Shown here in pieces: positions 5,381 through 41,779 of a stretch of 64,000 bases of DNA. The notes beneath the pieces are model-generated. The model worked only from the letters and a program-made list of their open reading frames with translations, was not told the DNA's origin and ran no database searches. This stretch comes from Sphaerodactylus townsendi (taxonomy: Eukaryota), in assembly GCF_021028975.2 (NCBI RefSeq), contig NC_059427.1, positions 121,334,001 through 121,398,000 on the forward strand. The letters are read 5' to 3'. The translations under genes were made by a program, and so were the position numbers. Position 1 is the stretch's first letter. Each line of letters opens with the position of its first letter.

Positions 5381-5571
5381 GGGTCCATTAGAGTGTTTCC
5401 ACAAATGGATTTTTTTTTTTGTCTGTGAAGTGCGAGTTTTTCTCTTCCCACCCCCCATTGCAGCTCTAGTGCCCCTCCAAAATGTTGCTTCTGCAGTGGG
5501 AGTGGGGAGGTGAGGAAATCGCACTCAAAGGATGGAAGTTCTTCCCTCTATGGAAGCACTCTAATGGACCC
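5381..5571. mobile_element. MITE with ~21-bp terminal inverted repeats
   Basis: gggtccattagagtgtttcca ... tggaagcactctaatggaccc. Confidence 0.55.
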
Positions 5572-6251
5572 GCACCAGGGTTCTGCTGTCAACTGGAATG
5601 TACGGGCATGATAGCTCAAAACTATTGCATTGTTCTTATCCTGTAGCGGTGAGGTGATTTGATCTTCCTCTTACCGTGATATTGCTGTGATCATTCCACC
5701 CTGTTTTCTTGTGTGCTGTGTTGTGGGAAGAGGCCACAGTACCATTTGTTAGGATGCGGGTGAACCTTATTGCAGGGCACTAGAGATTCTGTGAGCTCTG
5801 TTATGACAAGGGCATTCAATAGGGAAGTTGAAAGGGAGACATTCCACAAGAATTGTCATGTCAGGATCAACAGCCCCACACTCCATAAAATAGTGGCCTT
5901 CTCTATTTACAGGTAAATTTAATATTTACAGAGCTTTCATAGACAAGAGCCTATTTTTGCAGATGTTAAAATGAAGCAGTCACAAAAGGGTTTTTCCCGT
6001 AAATTGCCCTAATTCTATTCTCTAAGAATCTGGAACCAGCTGATAAGGCTAGAGTACTCTTATTGGAGCAAAGTTAATCAATGGGACTAATGACCCAATA
6101 GTATGTACTTCTACCCAGAAATAAATTCCAGTATGGTTGGCCAGGATTGCTGTCAGGGGAAGCATCCATAGTATTGTTGCCTAAAGCATTGCTCAGATCC
6201 CCCACATAATTGGGGGGGGGTATTGCTGTAACAACTCAAACCTGAATGACC

Positions 6252-10356: not shown

Positions 10357-10492
10357 NNNNNNNNNNNNNNNNNNNNNNNNNNNNNNNNNNNNNNNNNNNN
10401 NNNNNNNNNNNNNNNNNNNNNNNNNNNNNNNNNNNNNNNNNNNNNNNNNNNNNNNNNNNNNNNNNNNNNNNNNNNNNNNNNNNNNNNNNNNN
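10357..10492. other. Assembly gap (N run)
   Basis: Run of N. Confidence 1.
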
Positions 10493-10619
10493 ACTAGACT
10501 CTTGTCAAGAATAGTCTGTCACTTAGTAGTGCACAATCCTGCTCAAGGGCTTGCTATGAAGATAGGTTCATAAATCACTACATACCAAAAGGGCTGTGTA
10601 GTTGGCTGCTTTAATAATT

Positions 10620-11368: not shown

Positions 11369-11820
11369 GCAGAAGAGTTTGGATTTATACCCTGTTTTTC
11401 TCTCCTGTAAGGAGTCTCAAAGCAACTTATAGAGGCCCCTTCCACACATGCAGAATAATGCACTGTCAGTCCACTTTCACAATTGTTTGCAAGTGGATAT
11501 TGCTATTCCACACAGTAAAATCCAGCTGCAAAGTGCCTTGAAAGTGGATTGAAAGTGCATTATTCTGCATGTGCAGAAGGGGCCAAACTCGTTTCCCTTC
11601 CTCTCCTCACAACAGACACCTTGTGAGTTAGGTGAGGCTGAGAGAGTTCTAAAAAAACTGTGGCTACTTCAAGGTTACCCAGCAGGCTTTATGTGTAGAA
11701 GTGGGGAAACAAATCCAGTTCACCAGATAAGAGTCCACTGCTCACTTGGAGGAGTGGGGAATCAAATCCGGTTCTCCAGATTAGAATCCATCTGCTCTTA
11801 ACCACTACACCACACCGGCT
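11369..11820 (-). mobile_element. tRNA-derived squamate SINE (Squam3-like), interrupted by a MITE
   Basis: Reverse-strand head gtggtgtagtggttaagagc; body shared with the copies at 13206, 28095, 32520 and 59871. Confidence 0.8.
11434..11584. mobile_element. Harbinger-type MITE (GGCCCCTTCC family) nested in a SINE
   Basis: TIRs ggccccttccacacatgcagaataatgcact / agtgcattattctgcatgtgcagaaggggcc; flanks aga/aaa. Confidence 0.85.
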
Positions 11821-18572: not shown

Positions 18573-20410
18573 GCTTAGATAGTATGAGTAAGGTGCAGCC
18601 CCCAAAGCCTTTGACAGTATTTTATTGGTTCTGTAGTTCACAGTCCTGCTCACAAGGGGGCACTGTTCCTGCACAGCAAGACAGAGTGTGCGCCCTTTTT
18701 TTACAGTGGTATCTAATGAGATCAGCATAAGCTTTGGTCAATCCAGGAGGCATGAAAGGACTATTAAAATAACAGATGGCTGACCTAATTGGTGCATCCA
18801 GGGCAGACGGAGGACTGGATACTGTTTCCTCAAAAACAAGAGCAAAGCAAGTACCTGGAGGCAGGGTTAGTGCTGTTTATATTAAATGTTTGCTTTCAAG
18901 GAAGGTGCCCATAGTAGTGCTTTCAAAGGACTTCCAGTTTTTTCTAACAGCCAACTGCCACTAGAGAGAGAGGGGCTACTGCACAGCATGGATTTGGATT
19001 GACACTTCGAGGCTGGTGCATTTATTTGGCAGCGTATATTGTAGAGAAGCAAAGCGCTTGCTGCTAAAGCTAATGTGAGAGCTAACTACTGCTGTTCTTG
19101 CAAAGTAAGTGTGAACCCAACCTGTTTCAACTGTTTGCCCGTTTTGATAATCAACACTGGTGGGAACTCACCGAGGTTTCAGGCTGGGATTGAACTGGAG
19201 GCCTTCTGCAAGAGCTATTACCACCACTGCCCCCACTCTGGGTTCCTTCCCTTGTAGAAGATTCATCTGCGCAAGAGACTTGAGTGAGTCATGAAGCTGG
19301 GAATTCCAGCCTGCCGCTGGGCTCAGCGCTCACAAGTAGGCTTGGCTCCAGAACCTGCTCCAGAACAGCCTTCTAGCTGCGCCCTCTTCCCTCAGAGGGA
19401 ATAGCCAGAAAGTGGGCATAGCAAAGTTGTGACAAAAGAAGGGTCAAAAGGAGGCAAAGGTGTGATGGGCTGAGGTTTTAAAAGGCCTTTTAACAACAGC
19501 CTACTTTTGTGGCTCCCAGGATTACATAGCAACCCCCTAAATGCTTAATAGAAAGGGAATTCTTATGTGGATCCCTGCCTCTCCAGAAATATGGAGTTAG
19601 GGGAGCGATTTTGTGGATGCGATACTTACCAAACTGATTGGAAAATACTTCACGTGTTTGGTCATAAGATGGAGTGACTACTGTGTGTGATTGCCTCCCC
19701 TCCCATCTGAACCTAAAGTAGTATGTTTATGAATGTGTACAGAATGTTTGCTTTATAAGGATGGTATTGATTAATTTGGCCTGAATACAGGTGACTGAAA
19801 TTCTCTCTCTTTGCTACCTGATGGGTCATTGCTGGAAGCTACTGCAATGAAGCTGTGATGTGGGGAGAGTGGGATTGGAGCTTTTATTCAGAAAGCTTAT
19901 TTTCTTTCAGGATTAGCCGTTCGTCTGCAAAATCTACACTGGGAGTAGCCTTTATTATATACAATTAAATGTACCTGGTTCAAGCAGTAATAAGCATTAA
20001 CACTATACAAAGAATGTTCAGGGGCGGGAGGTGTTAGACTACAGGCCATTGCTTCATATGCAGTTTCTGCAAAACCTTATGCTGGAATAAAACGTTCTTG
20101 GAGGCACTGCAAGACTCTTTGTTTTTGCAGCAGCGGGCTGTCAAGAGTTATCTCGAGGGTTGCCGGCAACCCGGTGGGGGGTGGGGGGAATGACCTGTTT
20201 CATTAACAGAGGCTTAATGGAATGTTATTTATCATGTGATGTTTTCCTGTAGCCCGTGCAATAAGAACTGCCCATTCCCACATATTAAGCCTCTGTTAAA
20301 GAGCGAAGACATGTTGACAACCCAAACTACTACTCCGGATTGATATCTCCTTTGAAACCTGAAATGGCGCTCTGGTAAGGAAGGAGTTGCCCTTCCTGAA
20401 AAGAGAGTGT

Positions 20411-20540
20411 GACTCCTTCCACACATGCAGAATAATGCACTTTCAATGCACTTTGCAGCTGTGCGGAATAGCAAAATCCACTTGCAGACAATTGTGAAAG
20501 TGGATTGAAAGTGCATTATTCTGCATGTGCGGAAGGGGCC
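20411..20540. mobile_element. Harbinger-type MITE (GGCCCCTTCC family)
   Basis: Same TIRs as the copy at 11434; 3-bp TSD tgt/tgt. Confidence 0.85.
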
Positions 20541-21050
20541 TGTCGCTCGCAGGCTGTTGGTGTGAAAGCAAATAAGGGTGAGGAGAGAGCCGAGGACGCT
20601 TTGCCCAGAAGGTGGCGCTGTTGTTGCTGCTGCGGCTGCGCTGTCACAATCGCTGCTCCTCCTTTCGGTTGGGCTCGCTAGGAAATGACCTAAGAGGAAA
20701 CCCTCCGAGTTTGCAAGCCATGGAAAGAATTCGTCTTTCGTGAAAAGTAAGAGGAATTGCCCGGGGATCTGCCTGCTGGCATCGCCTGGGCGCTTTTCCT
20801 GGCGGCGGGGCGAAGAGAGGAAGGATGCCCATTTTGCACCTGCACTCCATGCTCGAGCTGCTGCCTTTCCTGCTCCTGCTGCTGCTGTTCTTGGCTGTGG
20901 GCTTCTTCCTGATCTACCTCCAGCGACCCGACCCAGAAACCAAAAAGAATTAATGAGCGTAGATTGGGGAGGGTTTGGGGGCTGCGATTTCTCTGCCAAC
21001 TAAAAAATGCAGATGCTCCTGTCCTGAGACGGGAAACGAAGACCCAACAG
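20541..21050 (+). promoter_or_regulatory. MIF4GD: Probable MIF4GD CpG-rich promoter and first exon
   Basis: Main CpG-rich block upstream of the first coding exon; CTCF-like CCAGAAGGTGGCGC at 20605-20618; candidate donors GTAAGA (20747) and GTTAGT (21051). Confidence 0.6.
20825..20953 (+). CDS. Putative 42-aa single-pass membrane micropeptide (uORF/smORF)
   Basis: MPILHLHSMLELLPFLLLLLLFLAVGFFLIYLQRPDPETKKN; A at -3; tandem stops TAA TGA; no homology or expression evidence available. Confidence 0.35.
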   Translation: MPILHLHSMLELLPFLLLLLLFLAVGFFLIYLQRPDPETKKN

Positions 21051-22547
21051 GTTAGTGACACTTGGTCCTTTGCAGAAGTCCCTTAGACAGAAACAAACTT
21101 GCAGCTCTGAGTGGGTAGAGCAGTTTCTGTGCTGACTTGACTTGGCGTGCCCTGGAATTTAAAACTGATTCACTTGTCCACGTATGGCTTGCTGAGATCT
21201 GCAAGATGTGGCAGCATGTTCAGACAACCGGTCTTTGGCTGACCCCTAGACCCCTTCCCATCCACAGGGCTGTTTGCTTGCATGTGCCTCAGCTGGCTGT
21301 CAGGTACATACAATGAATTATGTCAACTATGTGTACACCTCCTGGTATGCACATGGGAGACACACATGTCTGTTGAACTTTGGCAGTCCTTGCCCAGAAA
21401 AAGTGACAGGGAAGGTCAAGGGATTGGGAATATGCTTATGGAAATGCTATATACATGTGGTGAGGGGTGTAGACAAAGTGTGAGGTGCCTACATTAAGTA
21501 GAGGATTTTTTGGGCAGCAGTAGTATGAACATCACACTAAATCTGTCAAACTGTCATACATAACAAGAACGGTAAAGCCAAACCAACTGTGGGCCCTGAA
21601 GGTCTGTGCTGAGCTTTATTAAGAAGCTGGCTCATACTGAGACCTGCTGTTCATCCATGAGCACTCCAACATCTTTCCCAGCCTATAAAACCTGAGATCC
21701 CCCTTTAAAGTGAAGATTGTAGTATTGTGCATGGGACCCTAAGGTGCTCTGCCACTGATCTCTGAGGCCAAATTGGCAATAACACAAACAAGATGGAATC
21801 ATGCCTCTAATCATCTTACACTTTGACCAGAGCACAGTCCAAGTGAAAATCTAGTTGATGTGCTTTACAATACAGTGGATGTCATTCAGTATGCACAGGG
21901 GTGTATGGCTGCTGTAGTGCACACAGAAACAAAATTAATCTGAAGAGCAGTTCAGAACCCACTATAGTTGTTATGTATGTTTGTGTTTCTGTTTTCAGTG
22001 GGTGGAGGCAGTTGCCACTCTGCCAGGATTTCATTGGACATAAAGGGTGCCTATATCTTTGCCCAGTTTTGTCTGAGTCTTCAGCAATAGCCTACTCTGA
22101 CAGTACACTGGCATGCTAACATTTACAAAATGCAGTGAGCTTATCACAATGTAACTGTGTACTAGACCTTTGTGTGTGCATGTGTGTATGTTGGGGGGCG
22201 GGTGAACTAGAAAACTGACTTTCCAGTTCACAAAGAAGGGGCAGATAGGATAAGTTAGTTGTTCTGGTGAGTAGACCATTTAATGTGAGCAGGGATTGTG
22301 TGTGTGCATAAATCCTGTTGCAGACACATGTTTGGAACCAAGTCATGAGTGGCTGCATGCAACTCAAGACTTTAAAAATAAGCCTATTTAAATAGTATTT
22401 ATGACATTGCTATAACTATTGTAATGAGAGCCAGTGTGGTGTAGTGGTTAAGGTGTTGGACTAGGAGCTGGGAAACCCATGTTCAAGTCCCCACTTGTGC
22501 CATGGAAGCTTGCTGGATGATGTTGGACCAGTCATACTCTCAACCCT

Positions 22548-23140
22548 GACCCTGGCTAGTATTTTGATGGGAGACCTCCAAGGAACACTGGGGTTATTTT
22601 ATCAACCTCACTTCACCAGCTATGAGACAAGCATTTATGCAGGCCCAGCTAAATGTCCTTCCTTCAGCTGTCACATGGGGAAGATTCTCTCAAGTCCCTT
22701 TGCAAGAAAGACTATGTAAATGTCCCCTCAAGCAAGTCGAGTTCACCAAACATGTTCTACTGCACTATATTAAACATATCAAGCAAAGGAGATCATTAAT
22801 TGATCCCCACGCAAATAGATGTTTACTCATTTCTGATTTGGATAGGATTTGGTTGCTTTTAAATGACTGCAATGTTAGATGAACTGAAAATGTGGCAAAA
22901 TTTTTAATATCTATTTCATTAAGTACATGTAAACTGAATAACTGATTTCAATACCTTTGACTTCTCCCCCCCCCCTTTTTCCCCTATGCAATTAAAGGTT
23001 ACAAACAAACAAACAAATAAAAATTTTAAAAAAACATACTGGGGTGATGCAGATGCAGGCAATAGCAAAACAGCCCTGAAAGTATCTTGCCTAAAAAAAC
23101 ACTATGGGAATGCCATAAGTCACCTGTGACTTGACAGCAG
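22548..23140 (+). mobile_element. 5S-derived SINE split by a LINE insertion
   Basis: 5S-like cctggctagtattttgatgggagacc before the insert; body and tail (ccataagtcacctgtgacttgacagca) after it. Confidence 0.55.
22594..23037 (+). mobile_element. 5'-truncated non-LTR retrotransposon 3' end (RTE-X/CR1-group-like)
   Basis: Translates GRFSQVPLQERLCKCPLKQVEFTKHVLLHY, a Cys/His C-terminal motif; (ACAA)n/A-rich tail; flanking direct repeat actgggg. Confidence 0.6.
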
Positions 23141-23905: not shown

Positions 23906-24408
23906 CCTGCAGCATGAGCATGTCATGGTCAGGGAATTCTGATGAGTGAGCAGTGTGTTTGACTATTTGTCAATTCATTGTTAAGCTGGGCAATAAGCAT
24001 TTGGGGCTGGAATAGAACAGGGTGGGCAGGTAAGCCTGGATGTTTTCATGCAGAACAAAGATATCTTTCTCCCTCCCTCCTCTATACAAAAAAACCCTAA
24101 TGTGAACAGAATGAATGAAACACTGAGAAGTCTTGAATCAGAAGGATCTAAAGGGGAGGAAGATGGGAGTTATAGCTTCTGGCTGAAGAGATTTCCAACT
24201 TCGTGTTAGTTTTCAGGGACTCCATTATGTTGCTATCCCTCCCATATGTTTGGCACTTCTGTTTCCTGCACCATAGCAAGCCAGAGTTTCTGACATCTAG
24301 TCCAAACTCCTTTTTTGTCTCAATAACCTATGTCTGATCTCTTCTGTCTCCACAGTTTGCCGCTGTGTGCTGCTTCCCTGACCTAGCACCACTGAAACAG
24401 AGCAAGAA

Positions 24409-24490
24409 ATGGGAGACACAGGCAAAGAAGAGTATAAAATACACTCATTTGATGTAGAGAGTCAGCAGTTATTGAAAACAGCCTTCAAAG
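24409..24490 (+). CDS. MIF4GD: MIF4G domain-containing protein (SLIP1), first coding exon (82 nt; exon begins 24356)
   Basis: MGDTGKEEYKIHSFDVESQQLLKTAFK; acceptor cacag ending 24355; donor gttggc. Confidence 0.93.
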
Positions 24491-25842
24491 GTTGGCACCT
24501 CTGTCTTTCTCTCTGGCATTTTTCCCTCCACAAATCAACATGATTAATTTTGTTGAAAAATGGATGAAATCTGGAATTTTAGAGACCTATTACCATTAGC
24601 CATTTTAACTAGTTTAAAACTGGTTCTCATTTTCTCCCCTTCCATCTCAAAAGAAAATAACAACTCTGGAAATTCTGTTTTCCTGATGTTTCTAAAAATA
24701 CTGTTTGGATTCCAGACCACTCTATATGACTGCAGTTCCCAAACTTGCCCAGTTTGAAACAGAATTACACTTGTATTGTAGGTATAATGTAGGTCAATCA
24801 TGGAATAGCTTTCAACATGTCACTATATCTTGACCTCAGATTTCTCCCATCATTACAAATGAATAATTACTGGTCTTCGCTGCAGGAACACTGTCATGAG
24901 AAAAGATTTGTTGGAGCAATCCATGGACAGTCCATAAACTAAGCAGCTAGCAAAAATTAAGGAATCCAGAAATAAAGGACATATTAGCTGAACTATTTTA
25001 GACATTCAAAAATATGCCTGTGGCCCATTATGCATGGAAGGCTTACCTTGTGGCTCTTCATTGTGCAGTGGACTTGTAATGGGGTCTCCTTGCCTTTGTC
25101 TGTTAACACACGAGGAGGCAGAACACAGCCTGCAGCACAGTTTGTCTGCTGAACATTGCCAGCTCTCAGTTTCTAGTTCTCTTAGCTCTACTCTGCCCAT
25201 TGAATCAGCCTTAAAGGCACAGACCTTTCCCCTCTCCACACACCAACATACACTCATTCTCTCTCTCTCTCTCTTCCTGCCACTTCTGCTGTGGCAGGGA
25301 ACAGAGAGGCTTGTTTTAAAAGAAAGGCTGGTTTGAAATACATTTCTAAAGCCCTCCCGATTATCGGGGAGGGTGGAAGTAGAGCGGGGGATGTGTGGTG
25401 GAGCCAAAAACAGATCCTCCTTGGACTACTCCTTGGAAAAGTCCCCTCTGTTATTATTATATCAAAATCTCGATATAAGCAGGAAGGAGCTGGCAATATG
25501 AAAGTGGGGAAATGAGGGGAAAATCATGGCTAACAGGGTGAAGCTAGGCAGGCTGGCTGTGAGCAGAGGGAAGATGTCCGGGGCAAAGCTGTGCTCACTG
25601 GCAAATCTGTCATGCTCTGGCAGCAAAGCAAGTTAAAGTTGTGCTAGAAGTGGTCTTGCTTACCACAGAGAGAATGGAAAGTGAAAGCAGGGCTCCAGGA
25701 AATACATCTATACAGGAAATGTTGCTGCAATGGACATTTGCCCCCATCATGCAACAGATACATTGTGCATAATTGGCCAGTGTGTATTTTTCCTAGTTAC
25801 TATTTACAGTTACTGTTAACAATGTTGTATCTTCTTATGTAG

Positions 25843-25952
25843 ACCCCAGCAGTGTAGACTTGGAGAAAGTGGCCAATGTAATTGTGGATCAGTCCCTCGA
25901 AGACTATGTGTTCAGCAAAGAGGCCGGGCGTATCTGCTATACCATCATTCAG
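25843..25952 (+). CDS. MIF4GD: MIF4GD coding exon 2 (110 nt)
   Basis: DPSSVDLEKVANVIVDQSLEDYVFSKEAGRICYTIIQ; tag acceptor and gtgaga donor. Confidence 0.95.
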
Positions 25953-27476
25953 GTGAGAAATTGAAAATCCATGTTTCACATGATTTATTCATTCATTTAT
26001 ATTATAAAGACTTATAGAACATGCTGCTTAAAGCCATTTGTGTGCAACATTACAAGTAGAATTGGCAGTTTGTTCTGCAGTGTCAACCATATGCCACGAT
26101 CCAATTTGCACATACTGAACACCACTTTAATGAATGTGGCTGTCTATGATAAAAAAATAAATCGCATCTCAACATGAGACTTCAAGTCAGTGAAACTAGT
26201 ACTGCTAGTCCGAAATGTGCAAAGAAGTGTATGCAGATTTTAAAAAATTGGAAAAATAGGATTGGAAAGCATAAGATTTGGAAACAAAAGTAAGCCCCTT
26301 TCTATTTGCTTTCTTGTTATAGGGTCTTTCCCAGAAGATGCCATCATGTTTTCAAAATTATTTTCATTCATATGAACACTGTGAAATAAGTTTCTCGTTA
26401 TCTTAACTTTTCTGAAATCATTTATTTCAAAAATTCCCTTTTCCTTTGTTTCTTTGCTTTGAATAATTATACCTGACCTTTCTCCCAAAGTGGTTTATAT
26501 CATTCTCCCCTCCTCCAGTATTATCTTCACAAAAACCCTGTGAAGTAGGTTATGCTGAGAATACGGCCCAGGGCAGAGGCATATGTGGGGGAATGGCACC
26601 CGGAGACAAATTGTTTCAGGGTGCCCCCCCCCCCCCCACGCCTGGGGGCAGGGCTCCACTCTCACCCCCAAGTTGCACCCCCAGACTCCCAGGAGCTGGC
26701 AGCCCGGCTTCTGCCGTTCCCTCTGGGGAGAGCAGAAGAGACTGCAGTCCTCTGTCCTCCGAGAGGTGCTTTTATAAACACTGAAGTTGGGGACGGGGCT
26801 CAGGGGGTGGCGCGGAGTGCCTCCACAGCTCAAGTGGCAGAGCAAGGAATCAAACCCAGTTCTCCAGATTAGAGTGCACCTGCTCTTAACCACTACGTCA
26901 CACAGAAAGGAGCCTGTAGGTTGCATTAAAGAAGTTCTGGATGTGCATGCTGTTCATTTTGGCATTACCTCCAGCCATGATTCCTTTCCTGCAGATGGAG
27001 CTTGGTAATGGCATGCCCTGCTGACCTTTCTGGGTATCCAGCCCAACTTAGAGGATAGAAGGGGAATCTATCCCTCCAACAACAGCCCAGACTTGGTGAG
27101 CAAAACACATTCATGGCCCATTGTCAGTTTTGCCTCCCTGCAAACTTTATGCCCCTATAGGCTCCTGCATCATTTTTCTGTACAGTGATGGGGTTTGAAT
27201 ATTGAGAGATATGCACAGCTAGATGTACACATTTATTTACTTTATTTATATCCTACCTTTCTCCCCAACGGGAATTCAAAGCCGCTTATATCATTCTTCT
27301 TTCCCCTATGTTATCCTCACAACAACCCTGTGAAGTAGGTTAGGTGAAGTGTGTATGACTGGCCCAGGGTCACTCAGCAAGAATGGAGATTTGAACCTTG
27401 CCCCTCAATCCTATTCTGAAACTCTGCTCCTTGTACCACAATGCCTTTCCACCTGGGATCCACACCTTTGTTACAG

Positions 27477-27632
27477 GCAGAAAGCAAGCAGACTGGCCAG
27501 AGTATCTTCCGGCGAAGCCTTCTCAACCGACTTCAGCAGGAATACAAAGACCGTGACGAACTGCGAGGCCGTTCCCTCCAGGCCTGGGTCTGCTATGTCA
27601 CCTTCATCTGTAACATCTTTGATTACTTGAAG
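27477..27632 (+). CDS. MIF4GD: MIF4GD coding exon 3 (156 nt)
   Basis: AESKQTGQSIFRRSLLNRLQQEYKDRDELRGRSLQAWVCYVTFICNIFDYLK; cag acceptor and gtaaga donor. Confidence 0.96.
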
Positions 27633-28094
27633 GTAAGAAGACCCTGGTGAGAGGATGACCCTCTTCTTTGAAGTCACTAATCCAAATGTGTAAATTCTTT
27701 GTTGGCCTCTTCAAGTGTTCATGAGGGAATATGTGAATTGGAATCTGCCTCTCCCTTGAATGCTGGAGAAAGGAGCAGCCTTTCTTAAAGCAGCAGCCAG
27801 GATAGGCCAAGAGGACTTATAGGGCTGGTTAACCTGGCTAATTCCTGCCCTTTAAAGTGGCACTGTGTCGTTTTAATTGGGAGCAGTTACCTTTTGTCTA
27901 CTAAAGGACAGCAGCTGCTGCCAGGGAAAACACTACACTATATCTTGAAAACAAAACTAAAGGCAGCGCCTGTTGAAGGTGAGAAATGAATGAGATGTTC
28001 CAGGTGGGGTGGGGGGGATCTGTTACCTACGTAGAGTGCTGCATCCAGTTCAGTAGGCTTGAAACTCATGTCTCAGTATTTTGGTTATGCCCTA

Positions 28095-28377: not shown

Positions 28378-28720
28378 ATTTAACTTTAAAGATGCCGCAG
28401 AATTCTTTAGTGTTCTTCTTGCAACCTATTTAGCCTTGCTACGCTCTTGAGCATTTTAAATTATTATCTTGTATTTAGAAAACTTTTATGCTGCCTCTTC
28501 AGGAACCTACTGGATGTGGTTTACAGAATAAAAAAATAATTAAGACAAAACATTAAGTGAAAACTCTAAGCCCAGCATAAATATATATGCCCTAAAAACA
28601 GATCACAAACAGCTTAAAATAAATCTGGGGGAGAGGAGGGAGGGAGTGCAAAAATGATGTGTCTTCAAAAACTCAGTTATTCTTCCAACATCACTTAACA
28701 AATACGCTGCCCCCTAACAG

Positions 28721-28813
28721 GTAAACAACATGCCAATGATGGCGTTGGTGAACCCAGTTTATGATTGCTTGTTCCGACTGGCCCAGCCTGACAGCTTGCA
28801 GAAGGAAGAAGAG
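28721..28813 (+). CDS. MIF4GD: MIF4GD coding exon 4 (93 nt)
   Basis: VNNMPMMALVNPVYDCLFRLAQPDSLQKEEE; cag acceptor and gtgagt donor. Confidence 0.95.
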
Positions 28814-29057
28814 GTGAGTGTCCAGGGACACAGCAGGAAAAGCCATCTTCGGCTTGCCTGCACTCCAGTTGTTCTGCTTTGGGGCTAGAAAATCTACACC
28901 AATCAGTTTGCATATTTGCAGGAGGAAGACAGGGGACCTACTCTTTCCTTTCCTTGTTTGTCTGGTTTTGTTCTAATATCCAGCCTGGGAACAGGAGGAA
29001 TATCATTCAGTAGCTGCACCTTGACAGACCACATTCTTTTCTCTTCCTTCTGTTAAG

Positions 29058-29285
29058 GTGGACTGCCTGGTGCTGCAGCTGCACCGCATCGGGGAGCAGC
29101 TTGAGAAGATGAACTCCCAGAGGATGGATGAGCTCTTTTCCCTCCTAAGAGATGGCTTCCTGCTGCAGGAGGGGCTCAGCTCCCTTTCCCAGCTGCTTCT
29201 GCTGGAAATCATTGAGTTCCGGGCTGCCGAATGGAAAATGACAGACGCAGCCCAGAAATACTATTACAGCGAAGTCACAGATTGA
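29058..29285 (+). CDS. MIF4GD: MIF4GD last coding exon with stop (228 nt)
   Basis: VDCLVLQLHRIGEQLEKMNSQRMDELF...KYYYSEVTD stop; spliced CDS 669 nt = 222 aa. Confidence 0.96.
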   Translation: MDCLVLQLHRIGEQLEKMNSQRMDELFSLLRDGFLLQEGLSSLSQLLLLEIIEFRAAEWKMTDAAQKYYYSEVTD

Positions 29286-30024
29286 GCAGGCTGTCGCTAT
29301 CATCTGCTCAGGCTACCCAGAGGCAGGATTTGAATTCCTACTCTGACTTCCTTTCACCAGCAAACTTCAAACCAAACAAACGCTGCAACTATTTTTGTTA
29401 ACTTTTCTTCCCCTAGCACTTTTTGTACATAGGATGTATCATGCGCTTGCATAATAGTCCCTTTATTCTGGGTAACTAGTGGCTGAAATTGGGGAGAGGG
29501 GGGTGCAGCCTGATTTAGGAGGAAAGGATATAATTTCAGAACTGCTGTCTGGCATGGCCTTGCACTAAATAGCGACCTGTCAGTCACAAACTGAGCTGGC
29601 CTTTTCTTTGTAGAATTGCTGCCTCCTGAAAACTTGCTTGCAGATGCTGATTGGAATGTGTGCAAGGCAGTGGTTTAAACCTTGGCAGAGAATAATTCTA
29701 TGGACATTAGAAACCCTCTTCAGCCTCTTCTTGGTGAATTATTCTTTTAATAGTGTTGATAGCTGATCTTCATTTACCTTTTGGTTGAGAAGGGGAAAAA
29801 ACTAGCAGATAATTTTAGCTTCCTTTTGAGCCATTTGCTTCTTGGGTGTAGATTGTCATTATGAGACAGGAATGACATCTAGGCAATTTTACCTCTGCTC
29901 TGAGTTTGGTCCAAGTCCCAATTTCCTTTCTACCATCCACTAACAGCAGCTAGTTGCATCACACTTCCTATTGCTGGTTTGTTAATGGAAAACGTGCAGC
30001 TTTTCCAGCAAATTGTCACTTCTA

Positions 30025-30203
30025 GGCGCCTTCCGCACACACAGAATAATGCATGTTCAATCCACTTTCAGTGTACTTTGAATTCAGTGTACTGCATTTG
30101 AATTCAGTGCACTGGATTTTACCGTGCAGAATAGCAAAATCCACTTTCAAACAACTGTGCAAGTGGATTGAATGTGCACTACGTTGCATGTGGAGTAGGG
30201 GCC
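30025..30203. mobile_element. Harbinger-type MITE in the probable MIF4GD 3' UTR
   Basis: TIRs ggcgccttccgcac / gtggagtaggggcc; TSD cta/cta. Confidence 0.8.
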
Positions 30204-39115: not shown

Positions 39116-39281
39116 AAAAACCAGTTTTTAAAATATATCTCTTTGCCAGTTCGAAATCTTACAAAATCAGAAAGTAATCCCTTCTTTTGCCTTTTAAAAA
39201 AATATATGTTTGTCATTCTGTCGTTGGAGTTTCTCTCACATAACTATTCGAAATTCTCTTCTATTGATGTAATTATATGCA

Positions 39282-39371
39282 GGGCTCTTTGGCACATGCA
39301 GAATAATGCACTTTCAATCCACTTTCAATGCACTTTGAAGCTGGATTTTACTGTGCAGAATAGAAAAATCC
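39282..39371. mobile_element. Half copy of the GGCCCCTTCC-family MITE
   Basis: gcacatgcagaataatgcactttcaatcc... Confidence 0.7.
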
Positions 39372-40860: not shown

Positions 40861-41107
40861 TGGGTCTCCCCTTATTCATTATCCATCCACCATTTATTAT
40901 CCATGGCCAGAGCTTGTGGCACCACAAATCACTGGATGAGTGATTGTTTTGCTCAGATCTGTGGCTAGGGACATGAACTGTGATGTGATGGTGATTTGGC
41001 AGTGACAGTGCAGACGTCATGAGGATCTGTGCTTTTCAACCATTTTTGTGCCACCATGGATGGGAAGCATGGGATGTGTGATTGTTTTGGTTTTGCCTAT
41101 AGACTAA

Positions 41108-41243
41108 GGCCCCTTCTGCACATGCAGAATAATGCACTTTCAATCCACTTATTGTTTACAAGTGGATTTTGCTATTTCGAACAGCTGCAAAGTGCATTGA
41201 ACGTGGATTGAAAGTGCATTATTCTGCATGTGCAGAAGGGGCC
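41108..41243. mobile_element. Harbinger-type MITE (GGCCCCTTC family)
   Basis: Near-perfect TIRs; flanks taa/tta (TWA-type target). Confidence 0.85.
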
Positions 41244-41779
41244 TTAGGCATATTCTACACATTAACATGGTGGTTTTGTTTCATTCCAAAAATCATGAAT
41301 TCATGAGGATCCGTGTTTTCATGCTGCTGCTGTGCCACGAAGTGTTGTGTCCACTTTTTATAGTCCTGACTTCCACATGTGATTTGATACTGTTCTGGGG
41401 GAGTTCTCCATTAAATAGTGGAGGATCCATGGGGATCTGTGTAGATCCGCCTTTTCCCTTTCTCAAGTCCCAGCAATTCTATGTATGGAAATGTTAAGAG
41501 ATCATAGTCTACGCCTCTACTACTCCAGGAACATCTTGCTTGAGCAACAAATGAAGAGGTTGCTTCAAACAGAAAAAAGCTATTACGTTTGAAGGTCTTT
41601 TGATATTACTTGGAGTGTAGTAGTGGGAGTGTTAACACAGAGGGACCCCAACTCAGTTCTCCACTTAGCTATGAAATTCCTTGGCTGTCTTGCTTTTGCT
41701 CAATATGTCCAGAGATTACAACAGGGAGGGCCGAACTCTTGGGCAAAGGGTGAGGTAAAACCTATGGGAGCTTCTCCAC

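What the first reader, a model, noticed from the sequence alone, without database searches (positions are those of the whole stretch)
20825..20956. Candidate transmembrane micropeptide encoded in the MIF4GD leader (possible bicistronic mRNA)
Seen: a 42-codon ORF below the track cutoff, MPILHLHSMLELLPFLLLLLLFLAVGFFLIYLQRPDPETKKN. It has A at -3, 21 consecutive uncharged residues (12-32), a polar tail ending TKKN, 34 of 42 codons ending in G/C, and tandem in-frame stops TAA TGA. It lies upstream of a good donor (CAG|GTTAGT at 21050) that could splice to the MIF4GD acceptor at 24356. Established: single-pass micropeptides and uORF-encoded proteins on bicistronic vertebrate mRNAs exist; C-terminal dilysine motifs mediate ER retrieval, although TKKN is not the canonical KKxx spacing. 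Inference: an unannotated membrane microprotein co-expressed with, and possibly limiting translation of, the histone-mRNA translation factor MIF4GD/SLIP1. Caveat: CTG-rich leaders can produce poly-Leu by chance.
Basis: partly seen in the sequence, partly recalled or inferred. Interest (0 to 1): 0.8.

Follow-up and report, generated by a model that had tools for sequence, protein, structure and literature searches.

The report
Conserved reptile membrane micropeptide upstream of MIF4GD
A 42-codon reading frame just upstream of the MIF4GD gene has kept its start, frame, stop and amino acids from turtles to lizards, so it very probably encodes a small, unannotated membrane protein; no RNA data could be obtained to show which transcript carries it.

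Summary
Its length alone is ordinary: the window holds 238 ATG ORFs of 42 codons or more.

Conservation is what makes it stand out. The same ORF, with the same ATG and stop position, is intact in a close relative (Logan contig, 95% aa), the skink Lerista (88%), Anolis carolinensis (83%) and the turtle Emydura (75-79%; one in-frame +6 nt). Flanks are barely alignable and full of indels.
- Pairwise dN/dS is 0.11-0.42.
- Variable sites fall 10/8/23 on codon positions 1/2/3.
- Only this frame keeps its amino acids (0.81 identity, against 0.61-0.74 for the other five).

It is degraded in Phrynosoma. It was not found in two bird loci, an opossum MIF4GD mRNA or a toad locus. No annotated protein, Pfam family or paper matches it.

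Two conserved donors (20746|20747 and 21050|21051) bracket it. It is therefore intronic in one isoform and in the 5' leader in the other. Anolis has only the second donor, which places the ORF in exon 1 there.

The dilysine motif is not conserved. Verdict: a new conserved single-pass microprotein gene, probably the first cistron of an alternative MIF4GD mRNA.

The parts
20680..20701 (+). Conserved promoter or exon-1 motif AGGAAATGACCTAAGAGGAAAC (two GGAA cores), probably near the MIF4GD transcription start
   Evidence: 93-96% identical in L001, Lerista and Emydura, and 80% in Anolis. Also found in Phrynosoma, kiwi and a bird-like contig. Its role as a promoter element is inferred.
20720..20743 (+). 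uORF1, MERIRLS*, with a strong start context GCCATGG
   Evidence: ATG and the first six codons are conserved in L001, Lerista and Emydura and absent in Anolis. In Emydura the same ATG starts the annotated N-terminally extended MIF4GD isoform X1, P0252 (MERIRLATSDPKEAEK...).
20744..20752 (+). Donor 1, AAA|GTAAGA (exon ends 20746)
   Evidence: GTAAG is conserved in the window, L001, Lerista and Emydura. The exon-1 end of the Emydura isoform X1 protein fits this donor. Absent in Anolis. If it is used, the ORF is intronic.
20788..20824 (+). Conserved 37-nt leader just upstream of the ORF start
   Evidence: Identity to the window is 92% (L001), 81% (Lerista) and 70% (Emydura) without gaps, against 44-53% for the 32 nt before it. 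Not conserved in Anolis.
20825..20953 (+). 42-codon ORF plus stop, predicted to encode a single-pass membrane microprotein
   Evidence: Intact orthologues in five species; dN/dS 0.11-0.42; third-position bias p = 0.008; AlphaFold2 helix 2-32.
21007..21027 (+). uORF3, a 6-codon mini-ORF (MQMLLS*)
   Evidence: The ATG is conserved in all five species. The stop is at the same place in the window, L001, Lerista and Emydura. In Anolis it runs into the donor.
21048..21056 (+). Donor 2, CAG|GTTAGT (exon ends 21050)
   Evidence: CAG|GT is conserved in L001, Lerista and Emydura, Anolis (CAG|GTGGGT), kiwi and the bird-like contig (CAG|GTCGGT), with a likely equivalent in Phrynosoma. Use in this species is not shown.
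24356..24490 (+). MIF4GD exon 2: acceptor at 24355|24356, 53 nt of 5'UTR, main ATG at 24409 (GAAATGG)
   Evidence: It encodes MGDTGKEEYKIHSFDVESQQLLKTAFK, which matches MIF4GD proteins of reptiles and birds.

Best explanation
The ORF is a real protein-coding small gene. It encodes a 42-44-residue protein with three parts: a nearly invariant polar N-terminus (MP-x-x-HLHSMLELLPF), one transmembrane helix (about residues 12-32) and a short, variable, net-positive tail. The gene is at least as old as the turtle-lizard ancestor.

It lies between the MIF4GD transcription start region and the conserved exon-1 donor at 21050. When that donor is used, the mRNA is bicistronic: micropeptide first, then about 150 nt, then MIF4GD. 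When the upstream donor at 20746|20747 is used, the ORF is spliced out.

Because the helix ends 10 residues from the C-terminus, the peptide would be inserted after translation, like a tail-anchored protein. It most likely acts in trans inside a membrane on a larger partner. Its translation would also lower MIF4GD translation from the long-leader mRNA.

Shown: the ORF, its conservation, the coding signature and the conserved splice signals. Inferred: the transcript structure in this species, translation, membrane insertion and the cis effect.
For: Intact orthologous ORFs at the same place between SLC25A19 and MIF4GD:
- L001, a close relative: 95% aa.
- Lerista edwardsae, L012 2465-2593: 88%.
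- Anolis carolinensis, L016 4866-4994: 83%.
- Emydura macquarii, L011 6144-6278: 44 aa, 75-79%.

Conservation against the flanks: the ORF is 80-96% identical in nucleotides, and its only gap is an in-frame 6 nt in poly-Leu. The flanks are 41-71% identical with tens of gap columns.

Coding signature: dN/dS is 0.11-0.42 with dS up to 1.2, and variable sites fall 10/8/23 by codon position, p = 0.008. Frame +1 keeps 0.81 aa identity, against 0.61-0.74 in the other five frames.

Protein features: 26 invariant residues, including H5, H7, S8 and E11 outside the hydrophobic run. It has the highest hydropathy of the window's 238 ORFs. AlphaFold2 predicts one helix, residues 2-32, with pLDDT 93-95 in the core.

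Transcript architecture: donor 2 is conserved in all species. In Anolis it is the only donor, so the ORF lies inside exon 1 there. Birds keep the motif, an ATGCC start and donor 2.
Against:
- Donor 1 is conserved and is used in the Emydura X1 model, so the ORF is intronic in at least one isoform.
- On the long leader, a strong-context uORF1 precedes the ORF, and the ORF's own context is only moderate.
- The ORF is degraded in Phrynosoma and was not found in birds, an opossum mRNA or a toad locus, so it is dispensable in several lineages.
- Synonymous divergence between the window and L001 (0.10) is below flank divergence. Some constraint may therefore act on the nucleotides themselves.
- Only five sequences support the coding test.
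Confidence: 0.6

Rival explanations
1. It is a conserved-peptide uORF acting only in cis. The nascent peptide stalls or slows ribosomes on the long MIF4GD leader and so tunes MIF4GD translation. The released peptide has no function of its own.
For: It sits upstream of MIF4GD, flanked by two other conserved mini-uORFs. Peptide-level conservation is what defines such uORFs. Prolines lie near the stop (P35 and P37 are invariant).
Against: Stalling peptides are normally most conserved at the C-terminus, the part inside the ribosome tunnel at termination. Here the last 10 residues vary most, while the N-terminus and the hydrophobic helix are nearly invariant. A 21-residue, very hydrophobic, helix-forming core is what a membrane protein needs, not what stalling needs.
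Confidence: 0.13
2. It is an independent small gene with its own start site between 20747 and 20825. Its transcript is not the one that makes MIF4GD protein. It may be unspliced, may end in intron 1, or may splice to exon 2 without productive MIF4GD translation.
For: A gap-free conserved 37-nt block lies directly upstream of the ATG in four species. The region is a G+C-rich promoter-like island. Donor 1 would remove the ORF from the canonical mRNA.
Against: Anolis lacks that 37-nt block and donor 1, yet keeps the ORF between the shared GGAA motif and the single donor. Only one poly(A)-like hexamer (ATTAAA, 22769) lies between the ORF and exon 2 (places 23004-23040 were not examined). Donor 2 just after the ORF is conserved in every species.
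Confidence: 0.15
3. It is not coding. The block is conserved as promoter, CpG-island or 5'UTR sequence, and the open frame is a by-product of CTG-rich composition.
For: CTG runs keep several frames open; antisense frames -1 and -3 are also stop-free in all five species. Synonymous divergence between the closest pair is lower than flank divergence.
Against: Substitutions concentrate on third positions, and dN/dS is far below 1 even where dS is about 1. Only frame +1 conserves its amino acids. ATG and stop stay at the same positions, and the only indel is in frame, while the flanks are riddled with indels.
Confidence: 0.05

Closest known systems
Microproteins encoded upstream of the main coding sequence on bicistronic vertebrate mRNAs (from my own knowledge: MIEF1-MP, SLC35A4-MP, ASDURF/ASNSD1, PYURF/PIGY)
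   Same: A small ORF under protein-level purifying selection sits in the 5' part of a conserved gene's transcription unit, about 150 nt before the main start codon in the long-leader form. SLC35A4-MP is likewise a single-pass membrane protein.
   Different: No sequence similarity to any of them: no Pfam hit and no annotated relative. It is restricted to turtles and squamates as far as tested. An alternative donor can splice it out. Neither a bicistronic mRNA nor translation is shown here.
Very small single-pass or tail-anchored membrane regulators (from my own knowledge: sarcolipin, phospholamban, myoregulin, DWORF; also small complex subunits such as OST4)
   Same: Size of 30-50 residues, with one helix that fills most of the protein and a short polar tail after it. 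The predicted structure is a continuous helix.
   Different: No match to their Pfam families at E <= 1. The conserved part here is a histidine-rich N-terminal stretch, HLHSMLELLPF, which has no counterpart in them. No partner protein is known.
Conserved-peptide uORFs that act through the nascent chain (from my own knowledge: AMD1 MAGDIS, the fungal arginine attenuator peptide)
   Same: Upstream position and conservation of the peptide sequence.
   Different: It is much longer and dominated by a transmembrane-type helix, and the C-terminus is the least conserved part.

Membership tests
Protein-coding sORF under purifying selection | Start, frame and stop are kept in distant species | tested here: met
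   Five species from turtle to lizards keep the same ATG and stop column. The only indel is +6 nt, in frame.
Protein-coding sORF under purifying selection | Excess of synonymous change, specific to one frame | tested here: met
   dN/dS 0.11-0.42; variable sites 10/8/23 by codon position, p = 0.008. Frame +1 aa identity is 0.81, against 0.61-0.74 in the other frames. Only five sequences; no full codon-model likelihood test was run.
uORF-encoded microprotein on a bicistronic mRNA | ORF and main coding sequence lie on the same mature mRNA | tested here: inconclusive
   This is inferred from conserved donor 2 and from Anolis, where no donor lies between the shared motif and the ORF. No reads could be laid. 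Donor 1 offers an ORF-less isoform.
uORF-encoded microprotein on a bicistronic mRNA | The ORF is translated (ribosome footprints or detected peptide) | not testable with these tools
   No ribosome profiling or proteomics was available for these species.
Single-pass / tail-anchored membrane protein | One hydrophobic helix of about 20 residues ending within about 30 residues of the C-terminus | tested here: met
   Residues 12-32 are uncharged. Kyte-Doolittle 19-mer score is 3.04, the highest of 238 ORFs. AlphaFold2 helix 2-32, pLDDT 93-95 for residues 11-30. The helix ends 10 residues before the stop.
Single-pass / tail-anchored membrane protein | Membrane localisation | not testable with these tools
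   This needs a tagged construct or cell fractionation.
C-terminal dilysine (KKxx / KxKxx) ER-retrieval signal | Lysines at -3 and at -4 or -5 from the C-terminus, conserved | tested here: not met
   The tails end TKKN, TKKN, TKKH, TKQN and SKNH. Only the lysine at -3 is invariant; position -4 is T or S and -5 is E or D.
SERCA-regulating micropeptides (phospholamban, sarcolipin and relatives) | Sequence match to the family models | tested here: not met
   No Pfam family at E <= 1. The nearest language-model clusters are unnamed and score 0.83-0.84, within the range that shuffled proteins reach.
Conserved-peptide stalling uORF | Highest conservation in the C-terminal residues next to the stop | tested here: not met
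   The C-terminal 10 residues are the most variable part, and residues 1-21 are almost invariant.

The most novel reading that the evidence does not exclude
Reptiles keep an ancient bicistronic MIF4GD mRNA whose first cistron is a functional membrane microprotein. Birds, some iguanians and probably mammals have lost it. In turtles, skinks and this lizard, a second upstream donor lets alternative 5' splice-site choice switch the mRNA between a micropeptide-plus-MIF4GD form and a MIF4GD-only form. That would couple the output of a histone-mRNA translation factor to a membrane protein.
Probability: 0.35. Interest if true: 0.7.

Novelty: new member of a known kind. Interest (0 to 1): 0.6.

Why it matters
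Few small membrane proteins have been traced back hundreds of millions of years, and almost all known ones were found in mammals, fish or flies.

This is a candidate that annotation pipelines missed in every genome examined, including the well-studied Anolis carolinensis. It has a clear coding signature and an invariant histidine-rich N-terminal motif that suggests a specific partner.

It also offers a natural experiment. The ORF was lost in birds and in Phrynosoma while the surrounding leader and donor were kept. In some lineages a second donor can splice it out. It is therefore a tractable case for asking how bicistronic vertebrate mRNAs arise, are regulated and decay.

Tried and rejected
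- **RNA evidence.** The look-up of sequencing runs gave three runs of one organism holding all sampled words of 20560-21060, and one run of a second organism holding 90%. Local scripts cut the window at 23003/23041 or skipped that stretch. I draw no conclusion from the unknown-kind runs.
- **Exact look-up of the peptide.** Not on record.
- **Family and similarity searches.** Pfam gave nothing. The ESM Atlas gave only unnamed clusters at chance-level scores. A metagenome scan with the five-species alignment gave no relative. Rfam on 20300-21300 gave only sub-threshold miRNA-like hits on a neighbouring palindromic repeat.
- **Literature.** Nothing links MIF4GD to a uORF or microprotein, and the motif HLHSMLELL appears in no paper.
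- **Exhaustive protein search.** I spent it on the last MIF4GD exon, not on the peptide, to reach orthologous loci. The peptide therefore had only the word-based search.
- **Spliced model.** I searched the MIF4GD exons one by one by reference and never joined or submitted a spliced model.
- **Mammalian sequences.** Representatives that looked mammalian or human-like (such as P0010, P0012 and P0013) were not used further. No human locus was fetched, so presence in placental mammals is untested.
- **Failed or chance look-ups.** The Mauremys look-up failed. A weak toad match (E = 0.001 in 27 kb) has no ATG in frame and was dismissed as chance.
- **Chance poly-Leu.** Considered and rejected on the codon evidence.

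Full report
**1. Observation**

The ORF is exactly as described. Positions 20825-20956 translate to MPILHLHSMLELLPFLLLLLLFLAVGFFLIYLQRPDPETKKN followed by two stops.
- The start context is AGGATGC, with A at -3.
- 34 of 42 codons end in G or C.
- ACAG|GTTAGT ends an exon at 21050.
- CACAG|TTTGCC opens MIF4GD exon 2 at 24356, with the MIF4GD ATG at 24409.

The window carries SLC25A19 exons upstream on the same strand. MIF4GD exons lie at about 24409-24489, 25842-25955, 27468-27635, 28718-28816 and 29055-29285.

Length alone means nothing: the window has 238 ATG ORFs of 42 codons or more. This one has the most hydrophobic 19-residue stretch of all of them (3.04, against 2.49 for the next).

**2. 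Conservation**

A word-based search of 5.8 billion proteins found a single relative, P0001. It is a 42-residue product called on a 924-nt Logan contig, L001. L001 is collinear with the window from about 20575 to 21130.
- Inside the ORF it is 96% identical with no gap.
- The 37 nt before the ATG are 92% identical.
- The other stretches between and after the conserved elements are 53-75% identical, and the region outside the ORF carries many gap columns.

To reach more species I went through MIF4GD itself. The last exon was searched against the representative library. Full-length relatives were collected, and their genomic loci were fetched.

The ORF is intact at the same place between SLC25A19 and MIF4GD in:
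- Lerista edwardsae: L012 2465-2593, 88% aa.
- Anolis carolinensis: L016 4866-4994, 83% aa.
- Emydura macquarii, a turtle: L011 6144-6278, 44 residues, 75-79% aa.

All five share the ATG and the stop column. The only indel is six bases, in frame, in the leucine run. Against the window, the ORF is 80-96% identical in nucleotides. The sequence between the conserved elements is 41-71% identical, with tens of gap columns.

**3. Coding signature**

- Pairwise Nei-Gojobori dN/dS is 0.11-0.42. It stays at 0.11-0.17 where dS is near or above 0.8.
- Variable sites fall 10, 8 and 23 on codon positions 1, 2 and 3 (chi-square p = 0.008).
- Translating the same alignment in all six frames gives 0.81 mean amino-acid identity in the ORF's frame and 0.61-0.74 in the others.
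- Two antisense frames are also free of stops in all species, as expected for CTG-rich DNA. The open frame is therefore not the argument; the frame-specific conservation is.
- Twenty-six residues are invariant. They include the non-hydrophobic H5, H7, S8 and E11 in the motif HLHSMLELLPF, plus G26, P35, P37 and K40.
- AlphaFold2 on the five-sequence alignment predicts one helix, residues 2-32, with pLDDT 93-95 over residues 11-30 and a disordered tail.

**4. Where it is missing**

- Phrynosoma keeps the upstream motif, a stretch resembling the 3' end of the Anolis ORF, and the following ATG and donor. The start and the N-terminal part are gone.
- Kiwi (L013) and a G+C-rich bird-like Logan contig (L003) keep the motif, a short ATGCC-initiated stretch and the donor, but have no hydrophobic ORF.
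- An opossum MIF4GD mRNA contig has a 153-nt 5'UTR without the ORF.
- A spadefoot toad locus gave only a chance-level match with no start codon.

The simplest reading is an origin no later than the turtle-lepidosaur ancestor, followed by later losses. Crocodilians, tuatara, snakes, geckos and placental mammals were not tested.

**5. Transcript architecture (inferred)**

The alignment shows a string of conserved elements:
- A motif, AGGAAATGACCTAAGAGGAAAC (20680-20701), shared even with birds.
- uORF1, MERIRLS* (20720-20743), in a strong context.
- Donor 1, AAA|GTAAGA (exon end 20746).
- A 37-nt conserved block, then the ORF.
- A 6-codon uORF3 (21007-21027).
- Donor 2 (exon end 21050).

The NCBI model of Emydura isoform X1 (P0252) begins MERIRLATSDPKEAEK and then continues into exon 2. 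That fits the use of donor 1.

Anolis, however, has neither uORF1 nor donor 1. Its ORF lies about 85 nt after the motif, and about 45 nt before the only donor, CAG|GTGGGT. Birds and Phrynosoma likewise have only the donor-2 equivalent.

This makes donor 2 the ancestral exon-1 donor and places the ORF in the MIF4GD leader. Donor 1 would be a lineage-specific alternative that removes it.

On the long leader of this species, the ORF's stop is 97 nt from the exon end, and exon 2 adds 53 nt before the MIF4GD ATG. The intercistronic distance is thus about 150 nt.

**6. Mechanism**

I commit to a translated, post-translationally inserted single-pass microprotein that acts in a membrane on a larger partner. 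A secondary effect would be dampening of MIF4GD translation from the long-leader mRNA.

The rivals are:
- A nascent-peptide regulatory uORF. It is disfavoured because the C-terminal tail is the least conserved part.
- An independently transcribed small gene. It is disfavoured by the Anolis layout.
- Non-coding conservation. It is disfavoured by the codon evidence.

The dilysine idea fails: the tails end TKKN, TKKH, TKQN and SKNH.

**7. What is known**

- No Pfam family matches.
- No protein named or annotated by any source matched in the word-based search, which sees only proteins of 23-73 residues.
- Atlas clusters score only at chance level.
- No paper links MIF4GD to a uORF or microprotein, and none holds the motif.

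This is a new member of a known kind: a conserved, sORF-encoded membrane microprotein in the 5' part of another gene.

**8. Limits**

- No RNA or ribosome data were available. Those places were sent to no search tool afterwards and were left out of local comparisons.
- The runs that hold the stretch are of unknown kind, so they count neither for nor against expression.
- The spliced MIF4GD model was never joined or searched as a whole.
- No human sequence was fetched or compared.
- The coding test rests on five sequences and simple counting methods.

Noticed in passing
window 20415-20536; further copies at 11433-11590, about 30024-30203, 39280-39327 and 41107-41244: A palindromic, hairpin-forming dispersed repeat of about 120-150 nt (MITE-like) sits directly upstream of the MIF4GD promoter motif. 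Rfam gives only sub-threshold miRNA-precursor hits on both strands (44 bits, against gathering scores of 93-105).
   Followed up: partly
window 20720-20743; L011 from 6001: The short uORF MERIRL... has a conserved ATG and first six codons in the window, L001, Lerista and Emydura. In Emydura it reads through donor 1 and gives the annotated N-terminally extended MIF4GD isoform X1. In the three squamates it stops just before the donor.
   Followed up: partly
window 21007-21027: A 6-codon mini-uORF lies between the micropeptide stop and donor 2. Its ATG is conserved in all five species, and its stop is at the same position in four.
   Followed up: partly
window 20680-20701; L002 5438-5459; L013 6744-6772; L003 17-49: The motif GGAAATGACCTAAGAGGAAAC, with two ETS-like GGAA cores, is almost invariant from lizards and turtle to birds at the start of MIF4GD. 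It is probably a core promoter element.
   Followed up: no
L002 (Phrynosoma platyrhinos) 5440-5580: The micropeptide ORF looks pseudogenised here. A stretch resembling the 3' end of the Anolis ORF, the following ATG and the donor remain, but the start codon and the N-terminal and helix-coding part are missing.
   Followed up: partly
window about 10360-10500: A run of N (assembly gap or masked stretch) lies inside an SLC25A19 intron. It was left untouched.
   Followed up: no
many bird MIF4GD entries (for example P0078-P0096): Many bird MIF4GD protein models are 250-275 residues instead of 222. They carry an insertion after exon 2, apparently retained intron sequence in the models.
   Followed up: no
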